From Mizuhopecten yessoensis (Eukaryota), in contig NW_018408372.1 of NCBI RefSeq assembly GCF_002113885.1, forward strand, positions 384,874-448,873: a stretch of 64,000 bases of DNA. The letters are read 5' to 3'. This document shows positions 2,141-56,153 of the stretch, in pieces. Position 1 is the stretch's first letter; each line of letters opens with the position of its first letter. The notes beneath the pieces are model-generated. The model was not told the DNA's origin. It searched no databases and worked only from the letters and a program-made list of their open reading frames with translations. The position numbers and the translations under genes are program-made.

Positions 2141-2344
2141 CAACATCATATTTAAAGGATACATCTTCCATAACCTTTTTTTTATCTCATAAGCTACATA
2201 CAAGGGTATTCAACTATATTTCGATTGAAAACTTACCAAATCACGTACACTCCCCTTTATCTCCTACTCAAACATTATGTTTATTGTATATTTATATTCA
2301 TGCAGTTTTTTTAATATCAATGTAGTTCATCTTATCAGTCCGAA

Positions 2345-2910
2345 ACCGTTCATCTTGATCTTTTAATGTCGTCTCAAGCTGTCCTAAGCCGATATCCCCC
2401 GTTATCTGAAGGTCGTCTCAAGCTGTCCTAAACCGTACCTCTTGATCTCTGAAGGTCGTCTCAAGCTGTCCTCAGCCGTTCTTCTTGATCTCTGAAGGTC
2501 GTTTCAAGCTATCCTTAACCGTTCTTCTTGATCTCTGAAGGTCGTCTCAAGCTGTCCTTAACCGTTCTTCTTGATCTGTGAAGGTCGTCTCAAGCTGTCC
2601 TCAACCGTTCTTCTTTATCTCTGAAGGTCGTCTCAAGCTGTCCTTAACCGTTCTTCTTGATCTGTGAAGGTCGTCTCAAGCTGTCCTTAACCGTTCTTCT
2701 TTATCTCTGAAGGTCGTCTCAAGCTGTCCTTAACCGTTCTTCTTGATCTCTGAAGGTCGTCTCAAGCTGTCCTTAACCGTTCTTCTTGATCTCTGAAGGT
2801 CGTCTCAAGCTGTCCTTAACCGTTCTTCTTGATCTCTGAAGGTCGTCTCAAGCTGTCCTTTACCGTTCTCCCCGTTCACTGAAGGTCGTCTCAAGCTGTC
2901 CTCAGCAGTT
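2345..2910. repeat. 43-bp minisatellite, about 13 copies
   Basis: Unit gaaggtcgtctcaagctgtccttaaccgttcttcttgatctct starts at 2408, 2451, 2494 ... 2881 (exact 43-bp period), with a degenerate copy upstream. Confidence 0.95.
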
Positions 2911-3698
2911 CTTACCTGTTCTTTGTCGTTAAACACGTACGTCGTTCAGATTTGCGTCTCTTATTTACAGCAAATGGCTCTTAATTTAACATGTACACGT
3001 ATACAGTTTACCGATATCATTATATCTATTTTAGCTTCGTCCTCTCGTCCCTTCCTATATGTTAGTGTAAATAAACTGCAATTGCACGTATGCTTGTAAA
3101 TACATCTATTGCCCCTACGCTTCATGTATATTTAGATATCCGATGCATTATCAAGATCTGTGCGAAATATGCCAACCGAAATTAACATCATTTTATGTAT
3201 ATCGGTCATATTACGTTCTCTTCAATAAGTAAATAATTCCCGAAGACATAGATGGTTTATCATCTCCTAACAATAGATTAACTTTTCCAGGACCCCATTC
3301 AGATCGTAGCCTCCCGTTAACACATTCTAGCTATATACAATTTCTGGAAGAGCGTATGTTGTTACACTTGATCTGTCACCCTGATTTCACCAGTAAATAC
3401 CTTCTTTACTTTGTTGTTTATTCTCTTTTTCGGATAAGTTGTTACTAAGACGCTTAACAATGCATGCTAATAAACAACAAAACATAAATATAAGACTATT
3501 GAGTGGTTTTTTAGTCCAACAATCTGATAACATTGTGTGTTTAGTACATTTAGTACCAAAAGATAGACATTAAAAATTGTATAATATCAACACAATCTTT
3601 AATAGAAAAACAACATTTTTGCTTTATAGGTACCATGACTTATTGAAATAGACACTCCAAAGTGTATGTCTTTGTGCAACATGTTTAAAGAGATTGTA

Positions 3699-37168: not shown

Positions 37169-39299
37169 AGTGTTCGCTAACGAGATGTGCCTATTTCGTG
37201 TTCTGCTGTCATGTCCTGCTCCTATAACGACTCCTGTGGTAACACACCGTGTGCCTGGTATATTGAGGTCAAGTGTTATTTATGCTAATTCGGTACTGAA
37301 ATAAGTGCAACCGACCGTGACACGTGAGACTGACCACAACACACGATCGCAATATTGTTATCAATCTATTTACATGATATATTTATAGACTGCTGAAGAT
37401 CGCAAAATCTGTATAAATATTTCTAATGAATACTTCTGAATACTGGTTTATTTTCATTTTCATTTCATTTATTTCATTTATTTCACACCAGAACAAAGTG
37501 AATTCACATCAGACACTATGTTTTACCTAGGGTCGCCCTCAAATGAACAAAATCGTTAGAATTATTTTAAGACACTGTTGAAAATCAGAACAAGTTTCTC
37601 CAGGCAGACAATCTATAACCCGGCCTAACGAACATGCATGGGTACAATGGTATAATGCAGAAATATATAGATGTCAAGGCTGACCGGAGCAAGAATGTTT
37701 TCATTGTAAATAGTATATGCAGGTACTTCTAAATCATGTTAAAATATAAACTAAAATTTGAATTAAGGAGCAAGGTATGCCAATTGTAGGAATAATAAAT
37801 TAGGTGGCGTATAGCTCAAATTGTCTTGGTGGCTATGTGTACAAAGCTACAAGTAATATTGTGGTTTTTTTTCTAAGGTTTAAATTGGATTTTGTTCTCA
37901 CAGCATCTTTCAAGAGGGATGCCGTGGTGGGTGTGCCCCGGGTGCATCCCTCTTACATCATCTAACCTCACACAGGTGGCCTCTTTCCCTTCATTCACTT
38001 TTCTCTTTCATTTCTTCTCTCAAACTACCAATCATTCACTCTTTCATTCTTATTCATTCCAATAATAATAATAATAATATTTGATTTGATCAAAATGGGA
38101 TATTAAATTACAGAAATCATCCCTTCTATTCATATTCAACTATTAACGTACATTCATATTTACAAATTCATGTATGTGTTAGAAATCATGTTTGATTGAT
38201 TTGGGATTGCTACATTTCCCTCAAGTCTTGACCTGAAAAACCGAATGCATTTTACTGAAAGTAATAGTGTTATTGCTTTACTATAATAGTGTCAATGTAA
38301 GAATGATTTATTTCACACAGCTAAGTATCCTTTCTCCAAGGTCGTTAAGCGACGAAAAACCATTCGTTAGGCGGTGACATTCACACTTGCCCAGGACAAT
38401 GTACTATCCGAAACGTCTATTTAATATCCGTACCGGTCAAGTGTTACGCCTAAGTGATCGTAGACGACATACAACATATGAATTACTCTGAAGTAACTGA
38501 GTCAGCATGTATTATTATGATGCAAACTGTATTACAATGTGATACGAGACCTGAACCCTGTATAATCCCAATATGTATCTCTTTACATCTATCAACACCA
38601 CATGCTTTTGTTAACTCAGGTACAATGACACTACAAATTGAAATTGCAGTATCTGTATCATACTTTGTCCTTTGATTCATTCAAAGATTTTTTTTAACAA
38701 ATGAACAAATGTTTTTCTCTAAATCAACGCATGTAAGGTCGTAACAACATATAAATACTTAATATTTTGCTGGTCCGGTCGTCAATGCACCGCTTCCCAT
38801 TAACTGATACTAATTGGTATTTGGTTTATGGGGTCTAATCACACAAATATTACAAAAATACCGTAAATGAGGCTTCAAGTGGGAAAACTTATCTTAATGA
38901 AGCGTTTATAACCCGCAGGTTTTACAGTGATATACGCTCAACACGCCTATTTAATGAAACGGATTTTTCCTCAAACTCCAGACTCGTTTAAAAAATACAA
39001 TAGCAAACAAAAGCAAAATATTTTTATAGAAGTTCTAAAATCGAACTTATGTAAGACAACTGGTTCATACTACCGCTTTCATATCGTCTATGTGGAGTCG
39101 TCACATGGCTGTATAAATCATAATAGTGTAGGGTATATCAATGAAATATAAAGTAAAGATATCAAGTTTTATTTCAGTTGAAAGATTCGAGTACTAACAT
39201 TGTTGGCTATCCAGATACTTACAAGTGACAACTACATGAACCTGACGTTGGTAATTAACCTTGTACTCATTGCGTATAATAGTTTTGTATGCCGCAGGC

Positions 39300-39580
39300 A
39301 CTGAAGGGGCAGAACTATTATTAAATCAAGGTACATACATAAAGAAGGCAAGGATCTCACTTAGGGGGCAGAACTATTATTAAATCAAGGTACAGACATA
39401 AAGAAGGCAATGATCTCACTGAGGTGGCAGAACTATTATTAGATCAAGGTCCAGACATAAAGAAGGCAATGATCTCACTGAGGGGGCAGAACTATAATTA
39501 GATCAAGGTACAGACATAAAGAAGGCAATCATCTCACTGAGGGGGCAGAACTATTATTAAATCAAGGTACAGACATAAAG
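39300..39580. repeat. 59-bp minisatellite, about 4.7 copies
   Basis: ctgagggggcagaactattattaaatcaaggtacagacataaagaaggcaatgatctca at 39301, 39360, 39419, 39478 and 39537. Confidence 0.95.
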
Positions 39581-40829: not shown

Positions 40830-43800
40830 ATGTACAAATTGTCCGGACTAGTTTTCTGTGGCTGTCTTGCGCTGGGATGTAAGTAAAGTATTAATTTGTT
40901 CAATTTTAATAATGATGTTCAACCTTCATATATTGTGTTTTGGTTGTAATTATCATCGCAGCGTAAGGACACATTGCCAATAAGATCCGATTAATTATTA
41001 TATTAATTTAAAGCTTTTTTGATAGCATTGTTTTTTGTGTTTAAATTATAACATTGCTTCCTTATAACCAATATTTGGAAATGTAACTAGCAGTGACATT
41101 GTTTTATGTAGGTATACCATTTACTTATATTCAATAATTGTTAATGAATTAGTAAAATATTTAAGTTTAGTTAATCTCATTAAATGTAATTTAACTGTTG
41201 AATACTCGATGGGTTTTTTTTTTGGTTTTTTTTAAAATCTATTTTTGGGTTGCCTTAAATGATAAATAGTGTTTACCTTTTAGTCATGTTTTTTTTTTTT
41301 TTTTTTAAATTATTAAAGTACATAATACGATCCGTAGAAAACCCATTAAGGTAGATGCATTACATATAGGATAACCACATTCCACTCGTTTTCTTATTGC
41401 GTCAGTTTTCTCGCAGACATTACAAACACTGTTTGCATCAAATAAAAGCCAAACATTTGTAGAAATTTTATTATTATTCAACATTTTGTTGAGGACAATG
41501 TAAAGAAAATTGACATCCTATAGATATTTCAAAAGTGTGCTGAAATGGTTTAAATCGTTACAAATCGTTGAAAGATATGTTACCTATTAAGATGTGGCAA
41601 CTATTTGACGACGTGCATTGAAGCCATTGCTTGTCATAGCCTTGCTAAATTAGTAGACAGTCTCTTTGACAGTACGCATGCATATTGCCTACTAAATCTC
41701 GATAAAAATAACCCTTACAAGGGCTAGAATCTATAAATAACTATTGATACGTATATGTCTATACAACAAATCCAACCATAAACAATCATGTTTGTCTACG
41801 TTGTCAATTTTCTGTCAGTAAAACAGTTTTACGACAGTAATAGCACTTCGAGCTTCATAAAACTGCCAGAGAAAGAAAGTGGTGTATATATGGTCTTAGA
41901 ATATGTGTATTGGCTTTGTATGCTTGCAGTCAATGAATTGTATGCTTAGTCCCTCATGGTATTGTGGCCACTGACACAGAATAAATGTCGTTGAAATAAA
42001 GGTTAAGCGATATATCGGAGAAGACGTATATGTCAATTGTTAAGGAAAAAAGGAAAAGAGACTTGGGTCGTTGAAGAACAGAACTACTGTTAGTTAGCAC
42101 CCAAAGTCAAATCGAATCTCATATGAAACGTGACAAATTGCAAGAAGCGCGGTAGTACTTCAATTGTAATGTTCCGTTTGCACTTGTATTGACTATGAAA
42201 GCTAATTGAAAACTGATCATTATTTATATTAACCAGTTTATGTTAGAAAACTAAACTTCTTCTGTCTTCAGTTTTCTCACTGAAGTTGTGTAATATGTGG
42301 TTGACTAATGACTGATTGAATGTTTACATCCTATACTTTTGACCAATAGGTTTTTACGAAAACACTTCGTTCAAAGTTGATGCTTACCAGTCTACTTTTT
42401 GCCGGCAATCACCATTTCATTAGAGCATTTGGCTTAAAGCGAGGTGGATAATGGATCGATAGAGATTTTATCGAAGTGTTACTATAACATGAATATTAAA
42501 TATAAATAGAGAGGGAACACCAACTAATTTTGTCATTAAAAAGACAACTTTACAAATTACGGATACATAACATACCGTTCCTTTCATCACCTTTATTTTG
42601 TAATGTAAACCAAGCCAAAAGAAATTCCAGTGATACAACATTACGACCAACATAGGGGACTGATAATCAGAAGATTTAGCCACGTTCTTACGTAAAATAA
42701 TAACTATTGATACGAATAAGGCTGTAAATCTTTGGTATATTGAAAACCTGTCTCTGTTGCATTCGAAAGATAATGTTAAACTTTTCGTAATTAATTAAAT
42801 TAAACATCACACAATGAGAAAACTTGATAAAAATCAATGCGCAATTTTATTTTATTTTTAAATGGCCATCGAAATAACACCGTTTTATACAGTTTTGTAT
42901 CGAATTTTAACAACGCTTAGCTGCTTAATGATTGCGACCTACTAGATTTATTTATTTTCAAAATCACCGTTTTTAAAATCTTTGTTTATGTAAATGCCGT
43001 TTTCCTACATTTCGCAGATGGGTTTTTCTTTGGAGGAGCCCAGAACAGTCTGCTTGGAATGAGCAGAGGTTCTGGTATGGCGGGGATGGGCGGCGCAGCA
43101 GACATGTTCGCAGGTTTATTCGGTACGGGTGGAGGTGCTGGTATGGGCGGGGATGCTGGTATGGGCGGAGGAGGTGCTGGTATGGGCCGAGGTGCTGGTA
43201 TGGGCGGAGGAGGTGCTGGCATGGGCGGAGATGCTGGTATGGGCGAAGGAGGTGCTGGTATGGGCCGAGGTGCTGGTATGGGCAGAGGAGGTGCTGGTAT
43301 GGGCCGAGGTGCTGGTATGGGCGGAGGAGGTGCTGGTATGGGCCTAGGTGCTGGTATGGGTGGTATGGGAGCTGGTGGAAATTCCATTGCTTCCATGATG
43401 AACTCCCTAAGTAGGATGTCTCTCTGTGGTGAGACTCCTTCCCGGATCAGATACAAGACAAGGGGCAGCTGTAGCCCATACGAGTGCAACAGGATGAGTA
43501 CCGGATATGACGTAGCCTGTTTAGGTCACTCTTGTTGTTGTAAAACATTCCAATGTACAGTTTTGTTAGGTAAGTACAGAGTATAGTTTGATATTATTGT
43601 CGTAATTCTACTGTTAAAGAAAGCATATGTAAAAACTATTTTGATGTTTAGTGTGTTTTCCATTATAATTCTTACTGGATATTGCATCATATGACCAACT
43701 GGGGTTGATGACGTATTCAGGATTTCTCTTGTTCTCACGATTCTTGTTTTTCATGTCAACTTTGAGTTTAGATTTTCATCTTGCGCATTGACGCTGCAAT

Positions 43801-44695
43801 ATATTGATATTTACTCATGATTATAATATTCCGTCTGGATGAATTTTGAATTCTAACGAGACAAAATATCATTTGAATGTTTTTTATGGGTAAATGTGAA
43901 AGAAATAAAACAATAACATTAAATAATAAGATATTTCTTTTACTTTTGATCATATTTTTTTTCATCATTCGAGTAACTTTACCTAGTCAAGGCAAATAAG
44001 AGAACAAATTTTAATATAAAATATACAGAAACCAAAAGCTTCTCATGATAATTACCTTATACTATATTAAAGAACTTAAATTTAATAAATATACTTAAAG
44101 TACCATATTATGAAAAGTGTGTAACCCTGAAATAGCTTTGTCGATAACTTATAATGTCACCAACCTTTTTGTCAGCTATGCCTTGGTGAAACTGTCAAAC
44201 TTATGTCTCCTAATGAAGTGAATTTCGCATGCATGTCAGTCTTAATTGTTTTTTTACTTGCTTGTCTATTTGTAAAATTATAAAATAAAATCATATTACA
44301 AATTCACATCAAACAAGTATACAAGTTATATATAATAATTATATCTACTGCAGTTAACTTTCTGTATAGATAGGGTGTTAAATAGTTGACTACATATTAT
44401 ATTGCGTTTCAAATACCTACCTAGATACGGTAAGAAGTTACAGTTAACTAGCAAAATCGATTATATTTTTTTATTTATATGTTATCTATCTGATTATTTT
44501 TTTTATTCTATTTTTATTTTCTAACATATAATTAAGGAGATATAACAATGTGTTATGATTATCTATGTACCCTATTATCACACACATATATACTTTAGTA
44601 CAGTATTGTGTAATAATGTAGTCAAATATCATTGTTAGGGTTTATTTTTTGACTGATGATCAGCATTTTTTTGTATTTCAGATGCAAGGAAATGA
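40830..44695 (+). CDS. Secreted Gly/Met/Ala-repeat protein with C-terminal Cys module (family member A, about 204 aa)
   Basis: Exons 40830-40878 (MYKLSGLVFCGCLALG|gtaagt), 43018-43569 and 44682-44695, with phase-1 introns. Twelve AGMG units are followed by LCGETPSRIRYKTRGSCSPYECNRMSTGYDVACLGHSCCCKTFQCTVLLDARK*. AATAAA at 45001. Confidence 0.85.
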
Positions 44696-47212
44696 TCTAA
44701 GGAAAATTTTAATTTTGAGATAGAAATGGCTGTGAACGAAGGTATTGACCATCGCTTGCTTAGCATTCGGACAATTGTGAAAGCATCAGATGTGGATGAA
44801 AGCGGCATCAGCAATTTACAATTATATCCGTCGGTGTAAAATAGTTAGCATATGACATAATTATGGAAATGAATTGCACATACAAAATTGCAAAGCCATT
44901 ACATTATTATCTGTCCAGCGATCGATTAAACGTTGTGGAAGGAATCAGACTATTGGCAACTTAAACCACATTCATAATGCAACACAATACAAATATGTAC
45001 AATAAAAAATGATTATTTCAATACGAACTGACAGGTGTTGATTATATTTTATAAGTTTTTCTTAAATGTTCACATGTATATGTCTATGTTATATTAAATA
45101 CCATTACATAAAATAAATACTTATTTTTTATGTCTTTTTGTGTATATTTTTCCTGACAACTCATTTTGAATAGTCGGTGATGCCTGAATAAATTCTAAAA
45201 ATCGAGGAAAGACAAGCCTGCTGTAAATCACTGCATAGTTAGATGACTGGTAGAGGAATGATATTAATTTTATTATTGGTGTCAGTTCCTTCGTTTTTCG
45301 GACAATTAGAACCTCGATGTTTCTTTTTCCAGTCATGCCTGCTCTTTTGTATTGACATTTTTTGCATGATTAGTTATCAATATCGTTTCAAGGTTATGCT
45401 ATTTCAGTTGGATTGCATTTTTAAACATTTCACGAGGAACCAAATGTGTCAATACAACTGCAATATTAAAACAAAATCGATAAAACAATGACAAAATATG
45501 TAGAAAACAAATAAAATCAGCAATGTATGTTTTCGCCAATATTGCTAAATTCGTCAGTTATATTTACATTTTGATAGAGTAGTTATTCTCTATTGAGTTA
45601 TTTCGAACAGTTCTTTGAACAGCAAATTAAGTGTTGGCAACAATGACATTTTGTTTACACCACAACAGAGATTGATGACGTTACAATAGCAAATGTTGTT
45701 TAAATATCACAACAACATTTGTCTTCTCAAATTATGGCAATTGAAGGATGCAGAGAAAATGTGAATATATATTTATAAAACCGTTCACACGCTCAAATTC
45801 ACATTATGTGCTCAATTTTTCGTGTTGTTGACAAATAAAGAAAATTTAACATTTTGCCAATGAGTCGAAAGAATTTAGGAGAAAATTAAAACTGAATAAT
45901 TTTCAACGTTTATTCAAAGACTATTTTGTAATGTCACATGATTAAAATGAATAACAAGAAAGTTGGTCTGAGTTCAAAGTACATACTTGATCATGAAAAC
46001 GGTTTCACTAATGCTCTGAGGTTTATTAAATTAACCCCATCATCTCTCTTAACATGACCTTGGATTTTACGAAGACGCACTATAGTTATGTCTAGCAATC
46101 ATTATGTCTTGGTTTTCAATATTCATGTATAAGTGTCTATATTGATAAACGGTCTGTACGCGGTGTTTTGGTGACCCACAAACTTGTTTCACTCCATTTT
46201 ACGAGAGACATTATAGAGGATATCACATATGATGTATGCAATATTCACTGTTCATGGACAAATTGTTTCGTCATTGTAGCTGGTATTAAGTGTATGTGTA
46301 TGGCGGATTGTACAAACGCAAAAAATAAATCACAAAAAACATAATGTAGAACTGAGACCAGTAGAGCAAGCCATTGAGAACGGCATTTTAATTTGAAAAT
46401 GTATAATCAAAGGATGCTTATTTTTTGACAAATGAATATTAACAATAGACCACCAATCACTACAATTTCATTCATGTCTTGATTTGATTACTCAAAAAGC
46501 AGTTTTATTGAATTTGAAGCAATGTTTAAGCATATTTGCGTCACTGCCAAAAAGTGAACCTATGAATAGGAAACTGTTTTACCTGCATGACATTAGCTTA
46601 AGGAAACACTTTCTAAAGCAACACAAATCAGCAAACGTGTCCTTGGAGTAAAACCGCAATACAGAACGAAAGGGACTTGAACCTTTAACCTTTGACGGTC
46701 GCTATAATCAGATCAGCTGCCTGATCAGCGATAGATACAAATCCCCTACAGTTATATCCAAAAATGAAGTTGAGGGAAGGTAACTGTTTATATGCAAATC
46801 TACAATTGAACTATATAGTGTTTTGCCTGCAGTTAAAACACATTTAACAGTTTATAATGTGGTCAATCTTTACACCAAGAATAAGTATTAAGCGTAAACA
46901 GCGCTGCAGTAACAATACCTTAATATAAAAAGATCCCATTTTTGCGAGTACAAGTTATGAACGGAAATGGAAATCTATTAAATGTGTTTCCCGGAAATAT
47001 TTGTCAAGATATCTACAATTCCTGTATATATTTAAGAACCTTTACGCTATTGAAAACGTCTTCATAGCATCAAAACTATTTTTTAAACTATAATTGCTTA
47101 GTAATAACATCCCTTTGTATTGTATTGAGGTTCGTCATGTAAACGTCAGCACAATTCAGTGAAGCGAAGCGTTGTGCTCGATTTACGTTTTGGTGTCCAA
47201 GCCAAAACAGTC

Positions 47213-49081: not shown

Positions 49082-51694
49082 TCATTGCCTCATTCGGAAG
49101 CGTTGTGAACGTCGCCTCTCCATAAATTTAAGCATCTTGTCTGCAAAGTAAAGAAAAGGTAATTTTTAAACACAAAACAGGGTGTTGAAAGTGTTGTACA
49201 TCATAGTTATCTAGTCCTCAGATTCAAATTTCAACAGCTGCGTTATATGAGACATAATATTGAAGAATTTATATCAAACTTCAATTTGTTTAATTTACAA
49301 AATATTTTGATAATTAGCATTTGTCATCTTATATGTAAATTAACATGAGATTGGTCATGGAAACGCTTTCGTAACAGAAATGTTTCAATGTAAAGGTAGC
49401 AGTTCGTATTTGGGGGAAAAAAGTATCAGTAAATTTAGAATACTAGGCTGGAGACCACAACAAAGTACTCACCAAGCATTTCCGCATGATCATTACTTGT
49501 TGCGCAGCATTTTCCTGAGTAGCATTCCATTTTACGCTGACAATCCGTATTGTCTACACACATCTTCCTTAACCTAATAGGCGTCTTGGAACACAGTGTG
49601 CGTTGCCTGTATATATCCATTTGGCTTAGCATTAGAAAAGTAGCATTCGATTGACCTCTGTTAGCATTGAGCAATCGTTGCATTGCGAAATTAAGTTGAA
49701 CCGGTATAGATTGTATTGAAAAGTGACGTCGCCTGGACACTTGCTGCATCGTTGGATCAATAAATGAACCTTCATTACCTCTGACAACAGTTTCGGGTCT
49801 TATGCGTTGAACAATTGCATGACTTGAACCCAAAATGCCTGCAAGATAAGGGAGAACCCGAGCTAAAGAGGATACAATAGTCACTGGACCTTGCCTTGCT
49901 AATTTGGTTATTGTTTTCTGTGTTGGTTGCCTCAAAGTGGGAGACAGTACTGAATCACCTGCTGGAGTCTTTTCAACATATTCCGTTTGTGAAGTCTTAG
50001 CAATGTTCGCCATAAAAAAGGGCAGTGTTTTCGACGTTGATGATGTGATATTTCTTGCAAACGTGTTGGTGACTATGACAGCGCTAGCGTCAGTTGTTCC
50101 GATTTTACTATTACTTATCATTTTTTGCGGTTGGTTTGATGCTGTTGTTTTTGTAATTGTATGTTTAATTTTGTTATCGATATTGGTTGTTGAACTTTCT
50201 TTGTGCAATTCCTTTGTGACACTACTTCGATGTGACTCTCCAACACCTTTAGGCGAATTAAACATTTCAAGTGATATGAAATCACTCCGGGCATCGCCTT
50301 TGACCACAATCCTTGTTTCGTTCTGGTAAGGTGTTAGAGATGAAGTGTCAGTTTCAGTTTCTGTTTTCGCGGTCGAAATTGTCGTTTTTCCGCTTTTTCC
50401 CCTTGCTGTTTCAAAAAATGTATGTTCTGTTCGTTTAGATGTAGCTGACTCCATCGTCTGTTTTGGAGTTTCAGGCGATTTATTGGTTTCTTGTTCTGAC
50501 GGTTTCGTAATTTTGCTATATTTGCTTGTAGCTCTTCTTCTTGATTTAAGTCCAGATATCTTGGTTGACCTTAGCGGTGAACTTGTGGTTACTTTGACCG
50601 CGGTTTCTGAGGTTTTAAGCCGTTTGCTACTGGCGGTTTGAGTGACCGTGTGTCGTTCTGTTTTAGACCGATGTGACGTTTGCTTCGTAGCACGTGTCGA
50701 CTCTGATGTTTTAGTGGATGGTTTTGTCCTCTTCCTTCTTCTTGCTGATCTCCTTGATGATCTTCTTTTTGAGCGCCTAGCTGATCTTCTAGTAGAACTG
50801 TTGATTACTTTGGTCATAGTGGGCGGCGTTGTGTTGCTTGTACTTCTTGATAACTCCGCGGTTTTGCCTCTGTCTTCTTTATTAAGTGCTGTATTCGGAA
50901 CATCAGAGGAGGAACTTGCTAACGATAGTGCTTCGTTCTCTAAAACTTGGTTCCCATTTGCATTCGTAATTTCTATGGCTGGTGATTGAGTTGATATAGC
51001 TTTAATAAGAAAACGTGCATGGATTAAAAACAAATATACATAAATGTAATGCTGTTGTATTCATAATATCTTTTCATTCAAATCGAAATGATATGGCTTT
51101 GATTTTTTCTAATTGTGTGTTTGTTTGCTTACTTGTTTGTTATACTCCTCTGCCTCGAGAAAAATAAAGAAGCACATAATTACGTTTTGCATACACATCA
51201 CCAAACAAATTTTCAGTTCTGTTCTTGCATATGGTTAAGTTTATCAAAACACTTCTTGTATAACAAAAAGGTGTCACCATATTAAAATCACAGAATACTT
51301 CCTAGTTGGTCTGCAATATTCTATTTATGACCTCGTGTCTTTATACAATTTAAAATTAGCTTACTCGTGTTAGATAATCATGATAGCCAGCCCTCATTCT
51401 TTTGGGAACCTCTATGTTTTATTGTCATTCTCTTGAATAGTTTATTGAAAGCGAACAACATATTGAATAACTTAATTCAGAAATAAACACTGATATATAG
51501 ATGGTAATGTAAAAGTAAATCGAATAATCAAATATGTCAGAACTATTTTCCTTCATATGTTCACCTGGAAAAATTGTATTGCATTCCATTAATATCTTTT
51601 TGAAGCAGTTTCGAATAAATAAATTCTTACCTGAAATAAATACTGACAAAAGAAAAGACCAAAATAATGTCAAATCCATTTCCAAATTGATCAT
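49082..51694 (-). CDS. Secreted Ser/Thr/Lys/Arg-rich mucin-like protein with C-terminal Cys module (family member B, about 544-549 aa)
   Basis: Exons 51694 (or 51679)-51631 (MDLTLFWSFLLSVFIS|gtaaga), 50999-49473 and 49140-49082, with phase-1 introns. Ends LCSKTPIRLRKMCVDNTDCQRKMECYSGKCCATSNDHAEMLDKMLKFMERRRSQRFRMRQ*. Confidence 0.88.
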
Positions 51695-53509: not shown

Positions 53510-56153
53510 ATGGATACGCCAACAATGTTTTTATGCACATTCCTTCTGATGATGATTGTTTCAAGTAAGTTTCTAAACAAATAGGGCTATTTCGTTTATG
53601 ATTTACTTTTGATGATTTAATATACTTCATTGACGCAAAGTAAGGTTGCAATATCAACGAGGCGACATATATTAGACGTTTGTAAATAATATCTGTAGCC
53701 TACCTTATTGACTCGTAGTATTTTATTGACAACCATTAAGGCGACATAAAGCAATGATTTACAGAAAGATAGCATACACCATTGACTCATAGTAAAGTTG
53801 TTTATTTCATAAACACACAGTAATGTAGATGCATTATCGTCTCACAGTAAGACATATTTGTAACGTATTTCGTCGAATTGTAGTATTTTATCGACACTCA
53901 TTACGGCAACAAATATTATTTATTCATAGTAAAGTAGTATGCTTATCTAATTGACTCACATTATTGTAGTATCATCGACTCAGGAAAGCTAGCTTATATC
54001 ATTGACAGGTATAAATACGTCGAGCATATCCCGTTGATTCGTAATATTTGAATATTTCTCACAAATCATTGACTCACTGTATGGTAGCAAACATCCTTGA
54101 CTTACAGTAAGGCATCAAATATAAATGACTCATCGTAAAGTAGCAAAACAAGAAACAAGTTATTTCAAAGGATGTTAATTGAACATTCCGATATAATTTG
54201 AAATATTTTGTATAAGGTATATGCCTTGCTGGGTTACATTGATAACTCTACATAGCAAAAATATGCTTCCCTACATTAAGCATATCTAATTCAAACTTGT
54301 TTCCAATTTGCATTCGTAATTTCTATGGCTGGTGATTGCGTTGATATAACTTTGATAAGAGAACGTGCATGGACTGAAAAAACTTAGACACAAATGTAAT
54401 GTTGTTGTATTCATAATATCTTTTGATTCACAGAAATTTACAGCAATCATTTAAAATGCTGTTCTTTACTAGATACAAAAATGCATCGTTTGTTTAAGGT
54501 ATAGTTGCTTTATAATGATGTTCTAGAAAATGTAGTTTTTTAATTATTATATTTATTGTACATTTATGAAGAAAATATAAACTGGTGTGTAATATTTGCT
54601 GATTAAATAATAACTTTATTAAACGCAATGTTTTGAGGGCCGCAATGGCTGATTGGTTCAGTCGTCTGACCTTCTACAATTACTAGCCCATAACCCCTAG
54701 GGGCTTTAAAGCACAAACGAACGAAAACACTATTTTTGAATATGTAAGGCTGCAGTGTTAATAATACAAACATGTATGTTTAAAGGTGTCACGGCGTTAT
54801 CCCCGATGGCGCAGAGCATGAATGCAGAAATCATGTCAGACTACATGGACCTACAAAGAAAGGTTATGAGATATAGGATGTTTCAGTCTTCAATGGGAGG
54901 ACCGAATGGTGGGAATACTGTTCTTCCTGCTGGAATACAAAATCTCCTCGCCTCTTTTGGAGGAATGGTTCCATCAGAGATGTCATCTGTCCAAACATCG
55001 GTAAATAGTGGGTCACAGACAGGTAACTTTATGCCAGAAGTAGCACCAACACTTCAAAACATTGGACTAAAAAATCCACAACCTGCAACAAAAACAGCAA
55101 ACGCAAAGACATCATCAAAAAAGAGCAGTTTAAAATCAAAAAGTGGTAAAGTTACACATCCCAGCAATGCAGCTCAGACACCAAAGCAGTCATCAAGTAA
55201 ACAAACCCCAGTGACAGATATGGTGAGTAATGTACCAACGGCTATAGGCTCTACTCTGGAACAAAATCCAATGATTGGGCTCGAAATGGCCGCTTTGATG
55301 AATGCAGGATCGATGATGAATACTGCAGGAGGATCAATGTTTGACCAAGGACAGACATCAAATCCAAGTAATCCTACCCTAAAGGGAGTTCCGCAGATGG
55401 CATCATCAGGAATGAACAATGGTCAAGCTGGTATGTCGTTGCCACAAGCAAATCTTGGACAGATGTTAATACAACACAACTTATGCTCCGAGACGCCGTC
55501 CAAGTTGAGACAGATGTGTATGACGAATAAGGACTGCTCTCACAAAATGCAATGTTTTACTGGGAGATGCTGCGCTAAAAACCTCGACCATGCAGAAATT
55601 CTTGGTAAATATTACTTTCACTACTTTCCTAAGTTTGATTTAATGTATGTTTTGTATAAAAAGACAAATTATGATGTAGTAAGCCGTAAACGATAAATTT
55701 TGGTTACTTGTATAGATTCAATGTTGCGACGGTAAGGAATATTTGAATCCTGTTAAACCAGGTCCATTGAAGAGCTGTGGAGATCACACGTACCATATAC
55801 ATAACGTTAAGAACAGAGTTTTGACATCAATTACTGCTAGAAAATATCATTTCAGAACCTTACCTACATCCCTGGGCAAAATAGCCTACACCCCATTGGC
55901 TCCTCTATAGACTCTCACTGCAGTTCGAAGTTGTGTGTTATGAGATGGTTTAAGATAATTCATTTAAGGATCCAACAGCGAACTACCAAAATAAAGCATT
56001 TCAATATAAAATATGTACAGCATTTAAACAAAGAAAACACAACTAACATTGTGCTGATGTGTCCGTACCGCTAAATTTATATTTTGACTTTCAGACAACA
56101 TGGTTGAACATTTGGAGAGACAACGTGCCCGTCAAGCGTGGATGAGACTATGA
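53510..56153 (+). CDS. Secreted Met/Ser/Gln-rich protein with C-terminal Cys module (family member C, 310 aa)
   Basis: Exons 53510-53564 (MDTPTMFLCTFLLMMIVS|gtaagt), 54786-55604 and 56095-56153, with phase-1 introns. Ends LCSETPSKLRQMCMTNKDCSHKMQCFTGRCCAKNLDHAEILDNMVEHLERQRARQAWMRL*. The last coding exon is 59 nt, the same as in member B. Confidence 0.88.
53700..54150. repeat. Degenerate tandem repeat (about 33-bp unit) containing four perfect TGACTCA sites
   Basis: Recurrent attgactca.agtaaagtagca-like unit. TGACTCA at 53783, 53952, 54070 and 54126. Confidence 0.6.

What the first reader, a model, noticed from the sequence alone, without database searches (positions are those of the whole stretch)
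43128..43365. Abductin-like Gly/Met repeat with strict 7/6 alternation (13-aa higher-order unit x6)
Seen: twelve AGMG cores alternate exactly between 7-residue (GGG/EGG/RGG-AGMG) and 6-residue (GD/RG/LG-AGMG) units, giving a 39-nt super-period with interspersed D/E and R charges. Known: abductin, the scallop hinge-ligament elastomer, is Gly/Met-rich but is built on FGGMG repeats and has no Cys cap. Inference: a distinct Gly/Met elastomeric or coacervating protein whose repeat number could vary between alleles.
Basis: partly seen in the sequence, partly recalled or inferred. Interest (0 to 1): 0.7.

Follow-up and report, generated by a model that had tools for sequence, protein, structure and literature searches.

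The report
Scallop secreted Gly/Met-repeat, Cys-capped protein
The Gly/Met repeat is real and lies in an expressed, spliced gene for a small secreted protein found only in scallops, but the repeat is a young expansion specific to this lineage, the conserved part is the cysteine-rich tail, and the gene is not abductin.

Summary
Observation confirmed. At 43128-43361 (+) twelve AGMG cores alternate 7/6 residues. This is a 39-nt tandem unit, 5.9 copies, 92% matches.

The repeat lies in exon 2 of a three-exon gene:
- Exon 1 holds the signal peptide (ATG at 40830, exon ends 40878).
- Exon 2 is 43018-43569.
- Exon 3 starts at 44682, with the stop codon at 44693-95.

RNA reads show both splice joints, at low depth. 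The tissue of expression is unknown.

Orthologues turned up only in scallops: Pecten maximus, Ylistrum balloti and Argopecten irradians. They share the signal peptide, an N-terminal Gly/Met/Phe block and an 8-Cys C-terminal cap. The cap is 79-85% identical, with dN/dS at or below 0.07 and dS saturated. The middle is hypervariable: P. maximus has about six APAGMG units, and the other two species have no array.

The 13-residue super-period is therefore best read as a by-product of recent slippage or unequal exchange of a 39-nt unit. It is not a conserved structural period.

Canonical abductin genes (FGGMGGG, different signal exon) form a cluster on another contig of the same genome. The cap matches no Pfam family and no solved structure. 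It recurs only in neighbouring mucin-like scallop paralogues.

The elastomer or coacervate reading, and allelic length variation, remain untested.

The parts
40830..40878 (+). Coding part of exon 1: MYKLSGLVFCGCLALG plus the first base of a Tyr codon. This is a signal peptide, and the exon ends in phase 1 at a GTAAGT donor.
   Evidence: Sequence read. RNA reads in run X24 join 40878 to the start of exon 2 (table 5c). Orthologues start MYYFSGLVFFGCLALGYG and MYKVTGLVFFGCLTLGYG.
43018..43569 (+). Exon 2, phase 1 to phase 1, 552 nt. It encodes the whole mature body: N-terminal block, repeat array and Cys cap.
   Evidence: Acceptor ...tttcgcag|AT and donor TTAG|GTAAGT. Translation. RNA joint 43569>44682, GT..AG.
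43020..43127 (+). Conserved N-terminal Gly/Met/Phe block (GFFFGGAQNSLLGMSRGSGMAGMGGAADMFAGLFGT).
   Evidence: Aligned across four scallop species with invariant G, S, GM, D, F and LFG positions.
43128..43361 (+). The finding: 12 AGMG units alternating 21 and 18 nt, which is a 39-nt super-unit in 6 copies. 59.5% Gly, 15% Met, 15% Ala.
   Evidence: Absent or different in the orthologues.
43383..43568 (+). Conserved C-terminal module: a Met-rich helix-like lead-in (SIASMMNSLSRMSL) followed by an 8-Cys cap, C-x14-C-x4-C-x10-C-x4-CCC-x4-C.
   Evidence: 79-85% identity across four scallops with all 8 Cys invariant. dN/dS 0.01-0.07. No Pfam hit. AF2 pLDDT 72 with no PDB match.
44682..44695 (+). Coding part of exon 3: it completes the Asp codon, then Ala-Arg-Lys and TGA at 44693-44695. 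The 3' UTR follows.
   Evidence: Sequence. RNA joint. The orthologues end ...LLDA.
44696..45020 (+). 3' UTR with AATAAA at 45001-45006. RNA depth falls off after about 45000.
   Evidence: depth table. Three SNP-like differences in run X23 at 44747, 44762 and 44781.
49492..51060 (-). Neighbouring paralogue B: a large Ser/Thr/Lys/Arg-rich, mucin-like exon ending in a 6-Cys cap LCSKTPIRLR...CC.
   Evidence: Orthologues are named mucin-5AC-like and serine-rich adhesin-like.
54786..55606 (+). Neighbouring paralogue C: a low-complexity exon ending in a 6-Cys cap LCSETPSKLR...CC, with the same LG|GT exon end.
   Evidence: hhalign of the A-cap against the B/C-cap gives probability 86% over the LCxETPSRLR motif.

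Best explanation
The repeat is part of exon 2 of a three-exon, expressed gene. The gene encodes a small protein of about 205 aa (about 188 aa mature) that is secreted and appears restricted to scallops (Pectinidae).

The protein has four parts:
- a signal peptide;
- a conserved Gly/Met/Phe N-terminal block;
- a hypervariable [x]xAGMG low-complexity segment;
- a strongly conserved, slightly cationic 8-Cys C-terminal cap, probably with four internal disulfides.

Shown: the gene model, the splicing, the restriction to scallops among the databases searched, purifying selection on the cap, and the fact that the 12-unit array is an expansion specific to this lineage.

Inferred:
- The array grew by replication slippage or unequal exchange of a 39-nt unit. 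That unit was itself built from an older 18-nt xxAGMG unit, which is still seen in Pecten maximus. The strict 7/6 alternation is then a by-product of the duplication unit and not a selected structural period.
- The Gly/Met segment acts as a flexible, largely disordered and moderately hydrophobic spacer or self-associating tail.
- The cap is the folded module that binds or anchors the protein in an extracellular matrix or mucus layer. The neighbouring mucin-like paralogues carry a related cap and would do the same.
For: - Signal-peptide exon and exon phases.
- RNA splice joints 40878>43018 and 43569>44682.
- Orthologues only in Ylistrum, Argopecten and Pecten.
- A profile of the cap against 1.84 billion representative proteins returns only pectinid proteins, all with the cap at their C-terminus.
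- The four-species alignment shows conserved flanks and a variable middle.
- TRF gives 39 nt x5.9 at 92% here and 18 nt x5.9 at 77% in P. maximus. It finds no array in the other two.
- Super-units differ by 1-6 of 39 nt and use almost uniform codons (GGT GCT GGT ATG GGC).
- Cap dN/dS is 0.01-0.07 with dS above 1.
- AF2 gives coil at pLDDT about 40 for the repeat.
- The gene order A(+), B(-), C(+) is kept in other scallops.
Against: - No tissue or protein-level data. RNA depth was only about 1x in two runs of unknown tissue, and zero or one read in two others.
- The cap has no recognisable fold or family, so its binding or anchoring role is pure inference.
- Low AF2 confidence with a 4-sequence alignment does not prove disorder.
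- The alternating G-X-G-X pattern within each 13-mer could favour silk-like beta or PPII structure instead.
- Differences between units are 7 non-synonymous to 3 synonymous, concentrated at the first position of each unit. This is compatible with neutrality but also with selection for charge variation.
Confidence: 0.6

Rival explanations
1. It is a second, abductin-like rubber or coacervating protein of the scallop hinge ligament or periostracum. The Gly/Met array would be the elastic block and the Cys cap a cross-linking end.
For: - The array composition (59.5% Gly, 15% Met) is close to that of abductin exons in the same genome (61.5% Gly, 10% Met).
- The protein is secreted, and the exon plan is the same as abductin's: a phase-1 signal exon, then a large exon starting x-Y-G.
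- Met-rich insoluble proteins are typical of bivalve ligament and shell (PMC7591529). Gly/Met segments have been linked to PPII-type conformations (PMC12571646).
Against: - The array is short (79 aa), young, and missing in Ylistrum and Argopecten orthologues.
- The whole mature protein is only 35% Gly.
- There is no sequence similarity to abductin beyond composition, the signal exon differs, and the locus is unlinked to the abductin cluster on contig C5420.
- Very low read counts in the RNA runs sampled.
Confidence: 0.15
2. It is a host-defence peptide with a crustin-like layout: signal peptide, Gly-rich region, then a cationic Cys-rich C-terminal domain. It would be evolving fast, as immune effectors do.
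For: - Architecture: signal peptide, Gly-rich stretch and an 8-Cys cap with a net positive charge of about +4 counted.
- It is restricted to one lineage and sits in a tandem gene cluster.
- Small size.
Against: - No WAP or other antimicrobial-peptide family hit even at E<=10.
- The Cys spacing does not fit WAP.
- The paralogues with the related cap are 300-770-aa mucin-like proteins.
- The cap is under strong purifying selection, not diversifying selection.
Confidence: 0.1
3. It is not a functional protein feature: a minisatellite in non-coding DNA or in a decaying pseudogene.
For: High nucleotide identity between units and minisatellite-like structure. Low RNA depth.
Against: - The frame is open through the whole exon, with consensus splice sites used in RNA.
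- Orthologous intact exons occur in three other scallops, with cap dN/dS at or below 0.07.
- All array length changes keep the frame.
Confidence: 0.03

Closest known systems
Abductin (scallop hinge-ligament rubber; Cao, Wang and Bayley 1997, as summarised in PMC9999432)
   Same: A secreted scallop protein with Gly about 60% and Met 10-15% within the repeat. The gene plan is similar: a short phase-1 signal exon, then a large repeat exon beginning x-Tyr-Gly.
   Different: - Abductin is built on GGFGGMGGGX decapeptides with Phe. [quoted passage not shown]
- In this genome the abductin genes form a tandem cluster on another contig (C5420), with signal exon MNTYICLAVCLVAAVSAA.
- The present array has Ala instead of Phe, a 13-residue period and an 8-Cys cap. 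No sequence match was found.
Uncharacterised pectinid proteins: XP_ records named 'dnaJ homolog subfamily C member 7 homolog' (Ylistrum balloti, P0001) and 'uncharacterized protein' (Argopecten irradians, P0002), plus a 164-aa gene call in Pecten maximus
   Same: These are true orthologues. They share the signal peptide, N-terminal block, 8-Cys cap (79-85% identity), exon structure and gene neighbourhood.
   Different: - They lack the 12-unit array. Ylistrum has a single GAGMGGMG, Argopecten has a Pro/Ala-rich stretch, and P. maximus has about six APAGMG units.
- The 'dnaJ' name is an automatic-annotation artefact of the Gly/Met stretch.
Neighbouring mucin-like paralogues ('mucin-5AC-like', 'proteoglycan 4-like', 'serine-rich adhesin for platelets-like' in P. 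maximus, Y. balloti, A. irradians)
   Same: The C-terminal cap starts with the same LC(G/S)ETPSR(I/L)R motif, the coding exon ends the same way (LG|GT), and the position in the cluster is conserved.
   Different: Their caps have 6 Cys, not 8. Their bodies are Ser/Thr/Lys/Arg-rich and 300-770 aa long. Similarity to the type-A cap is significant only over 18 columns (hhalign probability 86%).
Methionine-rich insoluble matrix proteins of pearl oyster (LMP, NU-5, MRNP34; PMC7591529)
   Same: Secreted bivalve proteins with Met-rich low-complexity regions, proposed to aggregate or cross-link in ligament and shell scaffolds.
   Different: No sequence relation was detected, and the cap profile found nothing outside Pectinidae. 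Those proteins are much larger and were identified by proteomics. No protein-level data exist for this gene.
Type II crustins (Gly-rich region plus Cys-rich/WAP domain). Recalled from general knowledge, not tested against sequences here.
   Same: The order of parts: signal peptide, Gly-rich repeats, cationic Cys-rich C-terminal domain.
   Different: No WAP signature or Pfam hit. The Cys spacing is different, and the paralogues are mucin-like.

Membership tests
Abductin | Tandem GGFGGMGGGX decapeptides (Phe and a central Met) | tested here: not met
   The array has no Phe. Its units are xGGAGMG and xxAGMG with a 13-residue period. The pattern FGGMGGG is found only on other contigs.
Abductin | About 58-60% Gly with unusually high Met over the mature protein | tested here: inconclusive
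   Met within the array (59.5% Gly, 15% Met). Not met for the whole mature protein (34.6% Gly, 11.2% Met).
Abductin | Ala-rich N-terminal domain with 2 Cys and 2 Tyr, and no C-terminal Cys-rich domain (PMC9999432) | tested here: not met
   The N-terminus is a Gly/Met/Phe block and the C-terminus carries 8 Cys. Signal exon MYKLSGLVFCGCLALG, against MNTYICLAVCLVAAVSAA in the genome's abductin genes.
Abductin | Major protein of the resilium (inner hinge ligament) | not testable with these tools
   The tissues of the RNA runs are coded, and there are no proteomic data. Depth was about 1x in two runs.
WAP four-disulfide-core / crustin | WAP domain signature recognisable by Pfam, with 8 Cys at C-xn-C-xn-C-x5-C-x5-CC-x3-5-C-x3-4-C | tested here: not met
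   No Pfam family at E<=10 for the exon or the cap. The spacing here is C-x14-C-x4-C-x10-C-x4-CCC-x4-C.
Pectinid 'LCxETP' C-terminal cap family (unnamed; defined here) | C-terminal LC(G/S)ETPxR(I/L)R motif followed by a Cys-rich stretch with a CC pair, ending the penultimate coding exon | tested here: met
   The profile finds only scallop proteins, always with the cap at the C-terminus.
Silk-like (Gly-X)n beta-sheet formers | Long uninterrupted Gly-X alternation with small X (Ala/Ser), predicted or shown to form beta-sheet | tested here: inconclusive
   Each RG-type 13-mer reads G-G-G-A-G-M-G-R-G-A-G-M-G. That is a 9-residue X-G-X run between GGGG links, and the register flips every 13 residues. 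The GD units break the alternation. AF2 shows no strands there, but at pLDDT about 40.

The most novel reading that the evidence does not exclude
The AGMG array is a functional Gly/Met elastic or phase-separating block that arose independently of abductin. It would be tethered by a scallop-specific disulfide-knotted cap of a new fold. Scallops would then have evolved Gly/Met 'rubber' chemistry at least twice, and this lineage would be caught in the act of expanding a new one. Further AGMG-rich genes on contig C76748 would be part of the same toolkit.
Probability: 0.12. Interest if true: 0.6.

Novelty: new variant of a known kind. Interest (0 to 1): 0.35.

Why it matters
Lineage-restricted secreted proteins with fast-evolving low-complexity bodies are a well-known theme in mollusc matrices, so the general kind is familiar.

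Three things are useful here:
- It is a clean example of how such a body is made. A conserved signal peptide and Cys cap bracket a segment that went from a single GAGMG seed, through an 18-nt array, to a 39-nt higher-order array among related scallops.
- It shows that Gly/Met-rich sequence in scallops is not confined to abductin.
- It defines an orphan Cys-rich cap, shared by a small cluster of mucin-like genes, whose fold and partners are unknown.

If the protein did turn out to sit in the hinge ligament, it would offer a natural Phe-free variant for studying Gly/Met elastomers.

Tried and rejected
- Pfam on the exon and on seven caps gave nothing usable. There was one member each for EB module and DUF7107, at E about 0.01.
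- The ESM Atlas feature search on the cap and on the whole exon gave no usable hit.
- The AF2 cap model (pLDDT 72) gave 0 hits against the PDB with Foldseek. VIA-align wide gave best Z 2.2, which is noise.
- AF2 on the whole exon gave pLDDT 41 and is uninformative beyond 'no confident structure'.
- The word search with the whole exon and with the cap region found only two scallop orthologues.
- A search of the window's genome with the cap found only the locus itself.
- Literature searches for the motif strings and for scallop matrix proteomes gave nothing specific.
- The word search with the non-repetitive part of an AGMG-rich ORF on contig C76748 found nothing.
- The opposite-strand Pro-rich ORF was considered and rejected. 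The splice joints are GT..AG on the + strand, and the orthologues conserve the + frame.
- I did not search or fold the joined three-exon protein.
Full report
**1. Observation**

The stretch 43128-43361 (+) translates to twelve units: GGGAGMG, GDAGMG, GGGAGMG, RGAGMG, GGGAGMG, GDAGMG, EGGAGMG, RGAGMG, RGGAGMG, RGAGMG, GGGAGMG, LGAGMG. The 7/6 alternation is exact.

- Tandem Repeats Finder reports a 39-nt period, 5.9 copies, 92% matches and no indels (score 397). An 18-nt period fits much worse, at 76% matches with 12% indels.
- The 14-nt core occurs 13 times in the 64-kb window, against 0.11 expected.
- The array is 59.5% Gly, 15.2% Met and 15.2% Ala.

**2. Gene model**

The repeat sits in a 552-nt exon (43018-43569). 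It is bounded by a good acceptor (tttcgcag|AT) and a consensus donor (TTAG|GTAAGT), both in phase 1.

- Upstream, ATG at 40830 opens a 49-nt coding exon. It encodes MYKLSGLVFCGCLALG plus one base and ends at T|GTAAGT. This is a typical signal peptide, with a likely cut around ALG|Y.
- Downstream, an acceptor at 44680-81 gives exon 3. It completes Asp and adds Ala-Arg-Lys-stop, with TGA at 44693-95. AATAAA lies at 45001-06.
- Raw RNA reads from two of four transcriptome runs of the same species label show both joints: 40878 to the start of exon 2, and 43569>44682 with GT..AG. Coverage is confined to the three exons and fades after about 45000.
- Depth is very low: 14 and 4 reads in about a quarter of each run, and 0 and 1 read in the other two. 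The tissues are coded and unknown to me.

The predicted product is about 205 aa, about 188 aa after signal cleavage. Each exon was used by reference.

**3. Relatives**

The word search with exon 2, whole and restricted to the last 62 residues, found only two real relatives. One is a 134-aa protein of Ylistrum balloti, auto-named 'dnaJ homolog subfamily C member 7 homolog'. The other is a 151-aa 'uncharacterized protein' of Argopecten irradians.

Fetching their loci, and the Pecten maximus locus next to a paralogue, gave the orthologous exon 2 in all three species.

The four-species alignment shows two conserved parts:
- an N-terminal block (G-FFGG-NSL-G-S-GSGM-GM-GG-DMF--LFG);
- a C-terminal module (…LSRM-LCGETPSRIRYKTRG-C-PYECNRM-TG-DVACLGHSCCCKTF-CT…) with all eight Cys invariant.

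The segment between them is hypervariable:
- 12 units (about 84 aa) here;
- about six APAGMG-type units in P. maximus (18-nt period, 5.9 copies, 77% matches);
- a Pro/Ala-rich stretch without an array in Argopecten;
- a single GAGMGGMG in Ylistrum.

**4. Age and mode of origin of the array**

Cap codons give dN/dS of 0.01-0.07 between species, with dS at or above 1 and often saturated. The species are therefore anciently separated, and the cap is under strong purifying selection.

The six 39-nt super-units, in contrast, differ from each other by only 1-6 nt and use nearly one codon per position (GGT GCT GGT ATG GGC). The array is therefore much younger than the species splits, or is continually homogenised.

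The simplest account has two steps. An ancestral xxAGMG 18-nt unit, shared with Pecten, first produced a 21+18 pair. That 39-nt pair was then amplified by slippage or unequal exchange. On this account the 'strict 7/6 alternation' follows from the size of the duplicated unit and need not reflect a structural requirement. This step is inference.

Differences between units fall mostly on the first codon of each unit, with 7 non-synonymous against 3 synonymous. That does not discriminate neutrality from selection for charge variety.

**5. Not abductin**

A pattern for FGGMGGG finds 31 hits in the window's genome. Most are in a tandem cluster on contig C5420, at about 16, 37, 50, 67, 73, 93 and 134 kb. 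None is on the window's contig C5045.

Those exons read YGGGFGSMGG…(GGFGGMGGGN)n…GGFGGKG and have no Cys cap. Their signal exons read MNTYICLAVCLVAAVSAA. [quoted passage not shown]

The present gene shares only two things with abductin: the composition of its repeat (59.5% against 61.5% Gly, and 15% against 10% Met), and a common exon plan, which many secreted-protein genes have. Membership in abductin is rejected. A resemblance in material properties cannot be excluded.

**6. The cap and its family**

The cap has no Pfam match and no Atlas look-alike. An AF2 model of middling confidence (pLDDT 72: helix, short hairpin, helix) has no PDB match by Foldseek or VIA-align.

Two neighbouring genes in the window end in a related 6-Cys cap, LCS(E/K)TP-(K/R)LR--C-----C-----C----CC, with the same LG|GT exon end:
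- B, on the minus strand at 49492-51060, is Ser/Thr/Lys/Arg-rich.
- C, on the plus strand at 54786-55606.

The order A(+), B(-), C(+) recurs in Argopecten, Ylistrum and Pecten.

A profile of seven caps was searched against 1.84 billion representative proteins. It returned six convincing hits, all pectinid and all with the cap at the extreme C-terminus. They are auto-named mucin-5AC-like, proteoglycan 4-like, serine-rich adhesin-like or uncharacterized. A seventh hit was spurious.

Profile-profile comparison of type-A caps with type-B/C caps gives 86% probability, E 5e-6, but only over the 18 columns around LCxETPSRLR. Common descent of A with B/C is therefore probable but not proven. I can support the cap part. 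The signal peptides of A (MYKLSGLVF…) and of C-type proteins (MSSVILITSF… and MDVPFLFSIL…) are not evidently similar.

**7. How it most likely works**

Shown: it is secreted and expressed at least at a low level, the cap and N-terminal block are conserved, and the Gly/Met middle is variable.

Inferred: the cap is the folded, disulfide-stabilised module. Its eight Cys are an even number, so there is probably no free thiol. It would mediate binding or anchoring in an extracellular layer. The Gly/Met stretch would be a flexible, weakly hydrophobic spacer or self-associating tail whose length is free to drift.

AF2 gives coil at pLDDT about 40 for the whole repeat. That is compatible with disorder but is weak evidence.

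Within each RG-type 13-mer the residues alternate G-X over nine positions between GGGG links. Short beta or PPII segments are therefore conceivable. Gly/Met segments in GroEL tails, and reportedly in abductin, populate PPII (PMC12571646). Because 13 is odd and not a multiple of 3, neither a continuous (GX)n sheet register nor a GXX PPII register is maintained across units.

**8. Rivals**

- Abductin-like elastomer of ligament or periostracum (0.15). For it: composition, secretion, and the literature precedent for Met-rich ligament and shell proteins (PMC7591529). Against it: the shortness and youth of the array, its absence from orthologues, and low RNA counts.
- Crustin-like host-defence peptide (0.10). 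For it: the layout and the cationic cap. Against it: the lack of any WAP or antimicrobial-peptide signature, the mucin-like paralogues, and strong purifying selection.
- Non-functional minisatellite or pseudogene (0.03). Against it: the splicing, the open frame and the conserved orthologues.

**9. Novelty and verdict**

The gene belongs to a familiar kind: a lineage-restricted secreted mollusc protein with a fast-evolving low-complexity body. Its particular combination is not described in anything I could find:
- a Phe-free AGMG array with a 39-nt higher-order unit;
- an orphan 8-Cys cap shared with a pectinid mucin-like cluster.

The automatic names of its orthologues are uninformative or wrong.

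The assembly has 987,588,634 bases in 82,659 contigs. From memory, this fits the published Yesso scallop assembly. That identification is unverified, and nothing here depends on it.

Interest is moderate to low unless tissue or proteomic data place the protein in the hinge.

Noticed in passing
G000:C76748:639000-648000 (loci L025-L030), minus strand: Two further genes with long Gly/Met arrays. They use the same GGGAGMG heptad, as (GGGAGMGMG)n, with different codons, plus (GGGMMT)n and (GGGAM)n blocks. There is no Cys cap. One ORF pair is interrupted by a stop. A word search with the non-repetitive middle found no relatives.
   Followed up: partly
G000:C5420:16000-135000 (loci L014-L018): A tandem cluster of at least six or seven canonical abductin-type exons (GGFGGMGGGN repeats, with a PFGGMGGG variant at about 134 kb). 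Each is preceded by a signal exon MNT(Y/F)ICLA(V/S)CLV(A/V)AVS(A/S)A. One copy lies beside a long run of N. Earlier notes of this scan (s1-507896, s1-507976) describe the same genes.
   Followed up: partly
window 49492-51060 (-) and 54786-55606 (+): Two mucin-like or low-complexity secreted-protein genes ending in a 6-Cys LCSxTP cap. Orthologues in other scallops are auto-named mucin-5AC-like, proteoglycan 4-like and serine-rich adhesin-like. Type C proteins share an N-terminal MNA(D/E)IM-D-M-L(R/Q)RK motif.
   Followed up: partly
P0001 (Ylistrum balloti XP record): The orthologue is named 'dnaJ homolog subfamily C member 7 homolog'. There is no J domain, so the name is evidently an annotation artefact of the Gly/Met stretch.
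   Followed up: yes
window 44747, 44762, 44781: Three base differences (G>T, A>C, A>G) in the 3' UTR, seen in all reads of RNA run X23. They are most simply a different haplotype or strain.
   Followed up: no
window 2344-2913 and 39299-39580: Two other strong tandem arrays: 43 nt x13.2 at 89% matches, and 59 nt x4.8 at 93% matches. Neither was examined.
   Followed up: no
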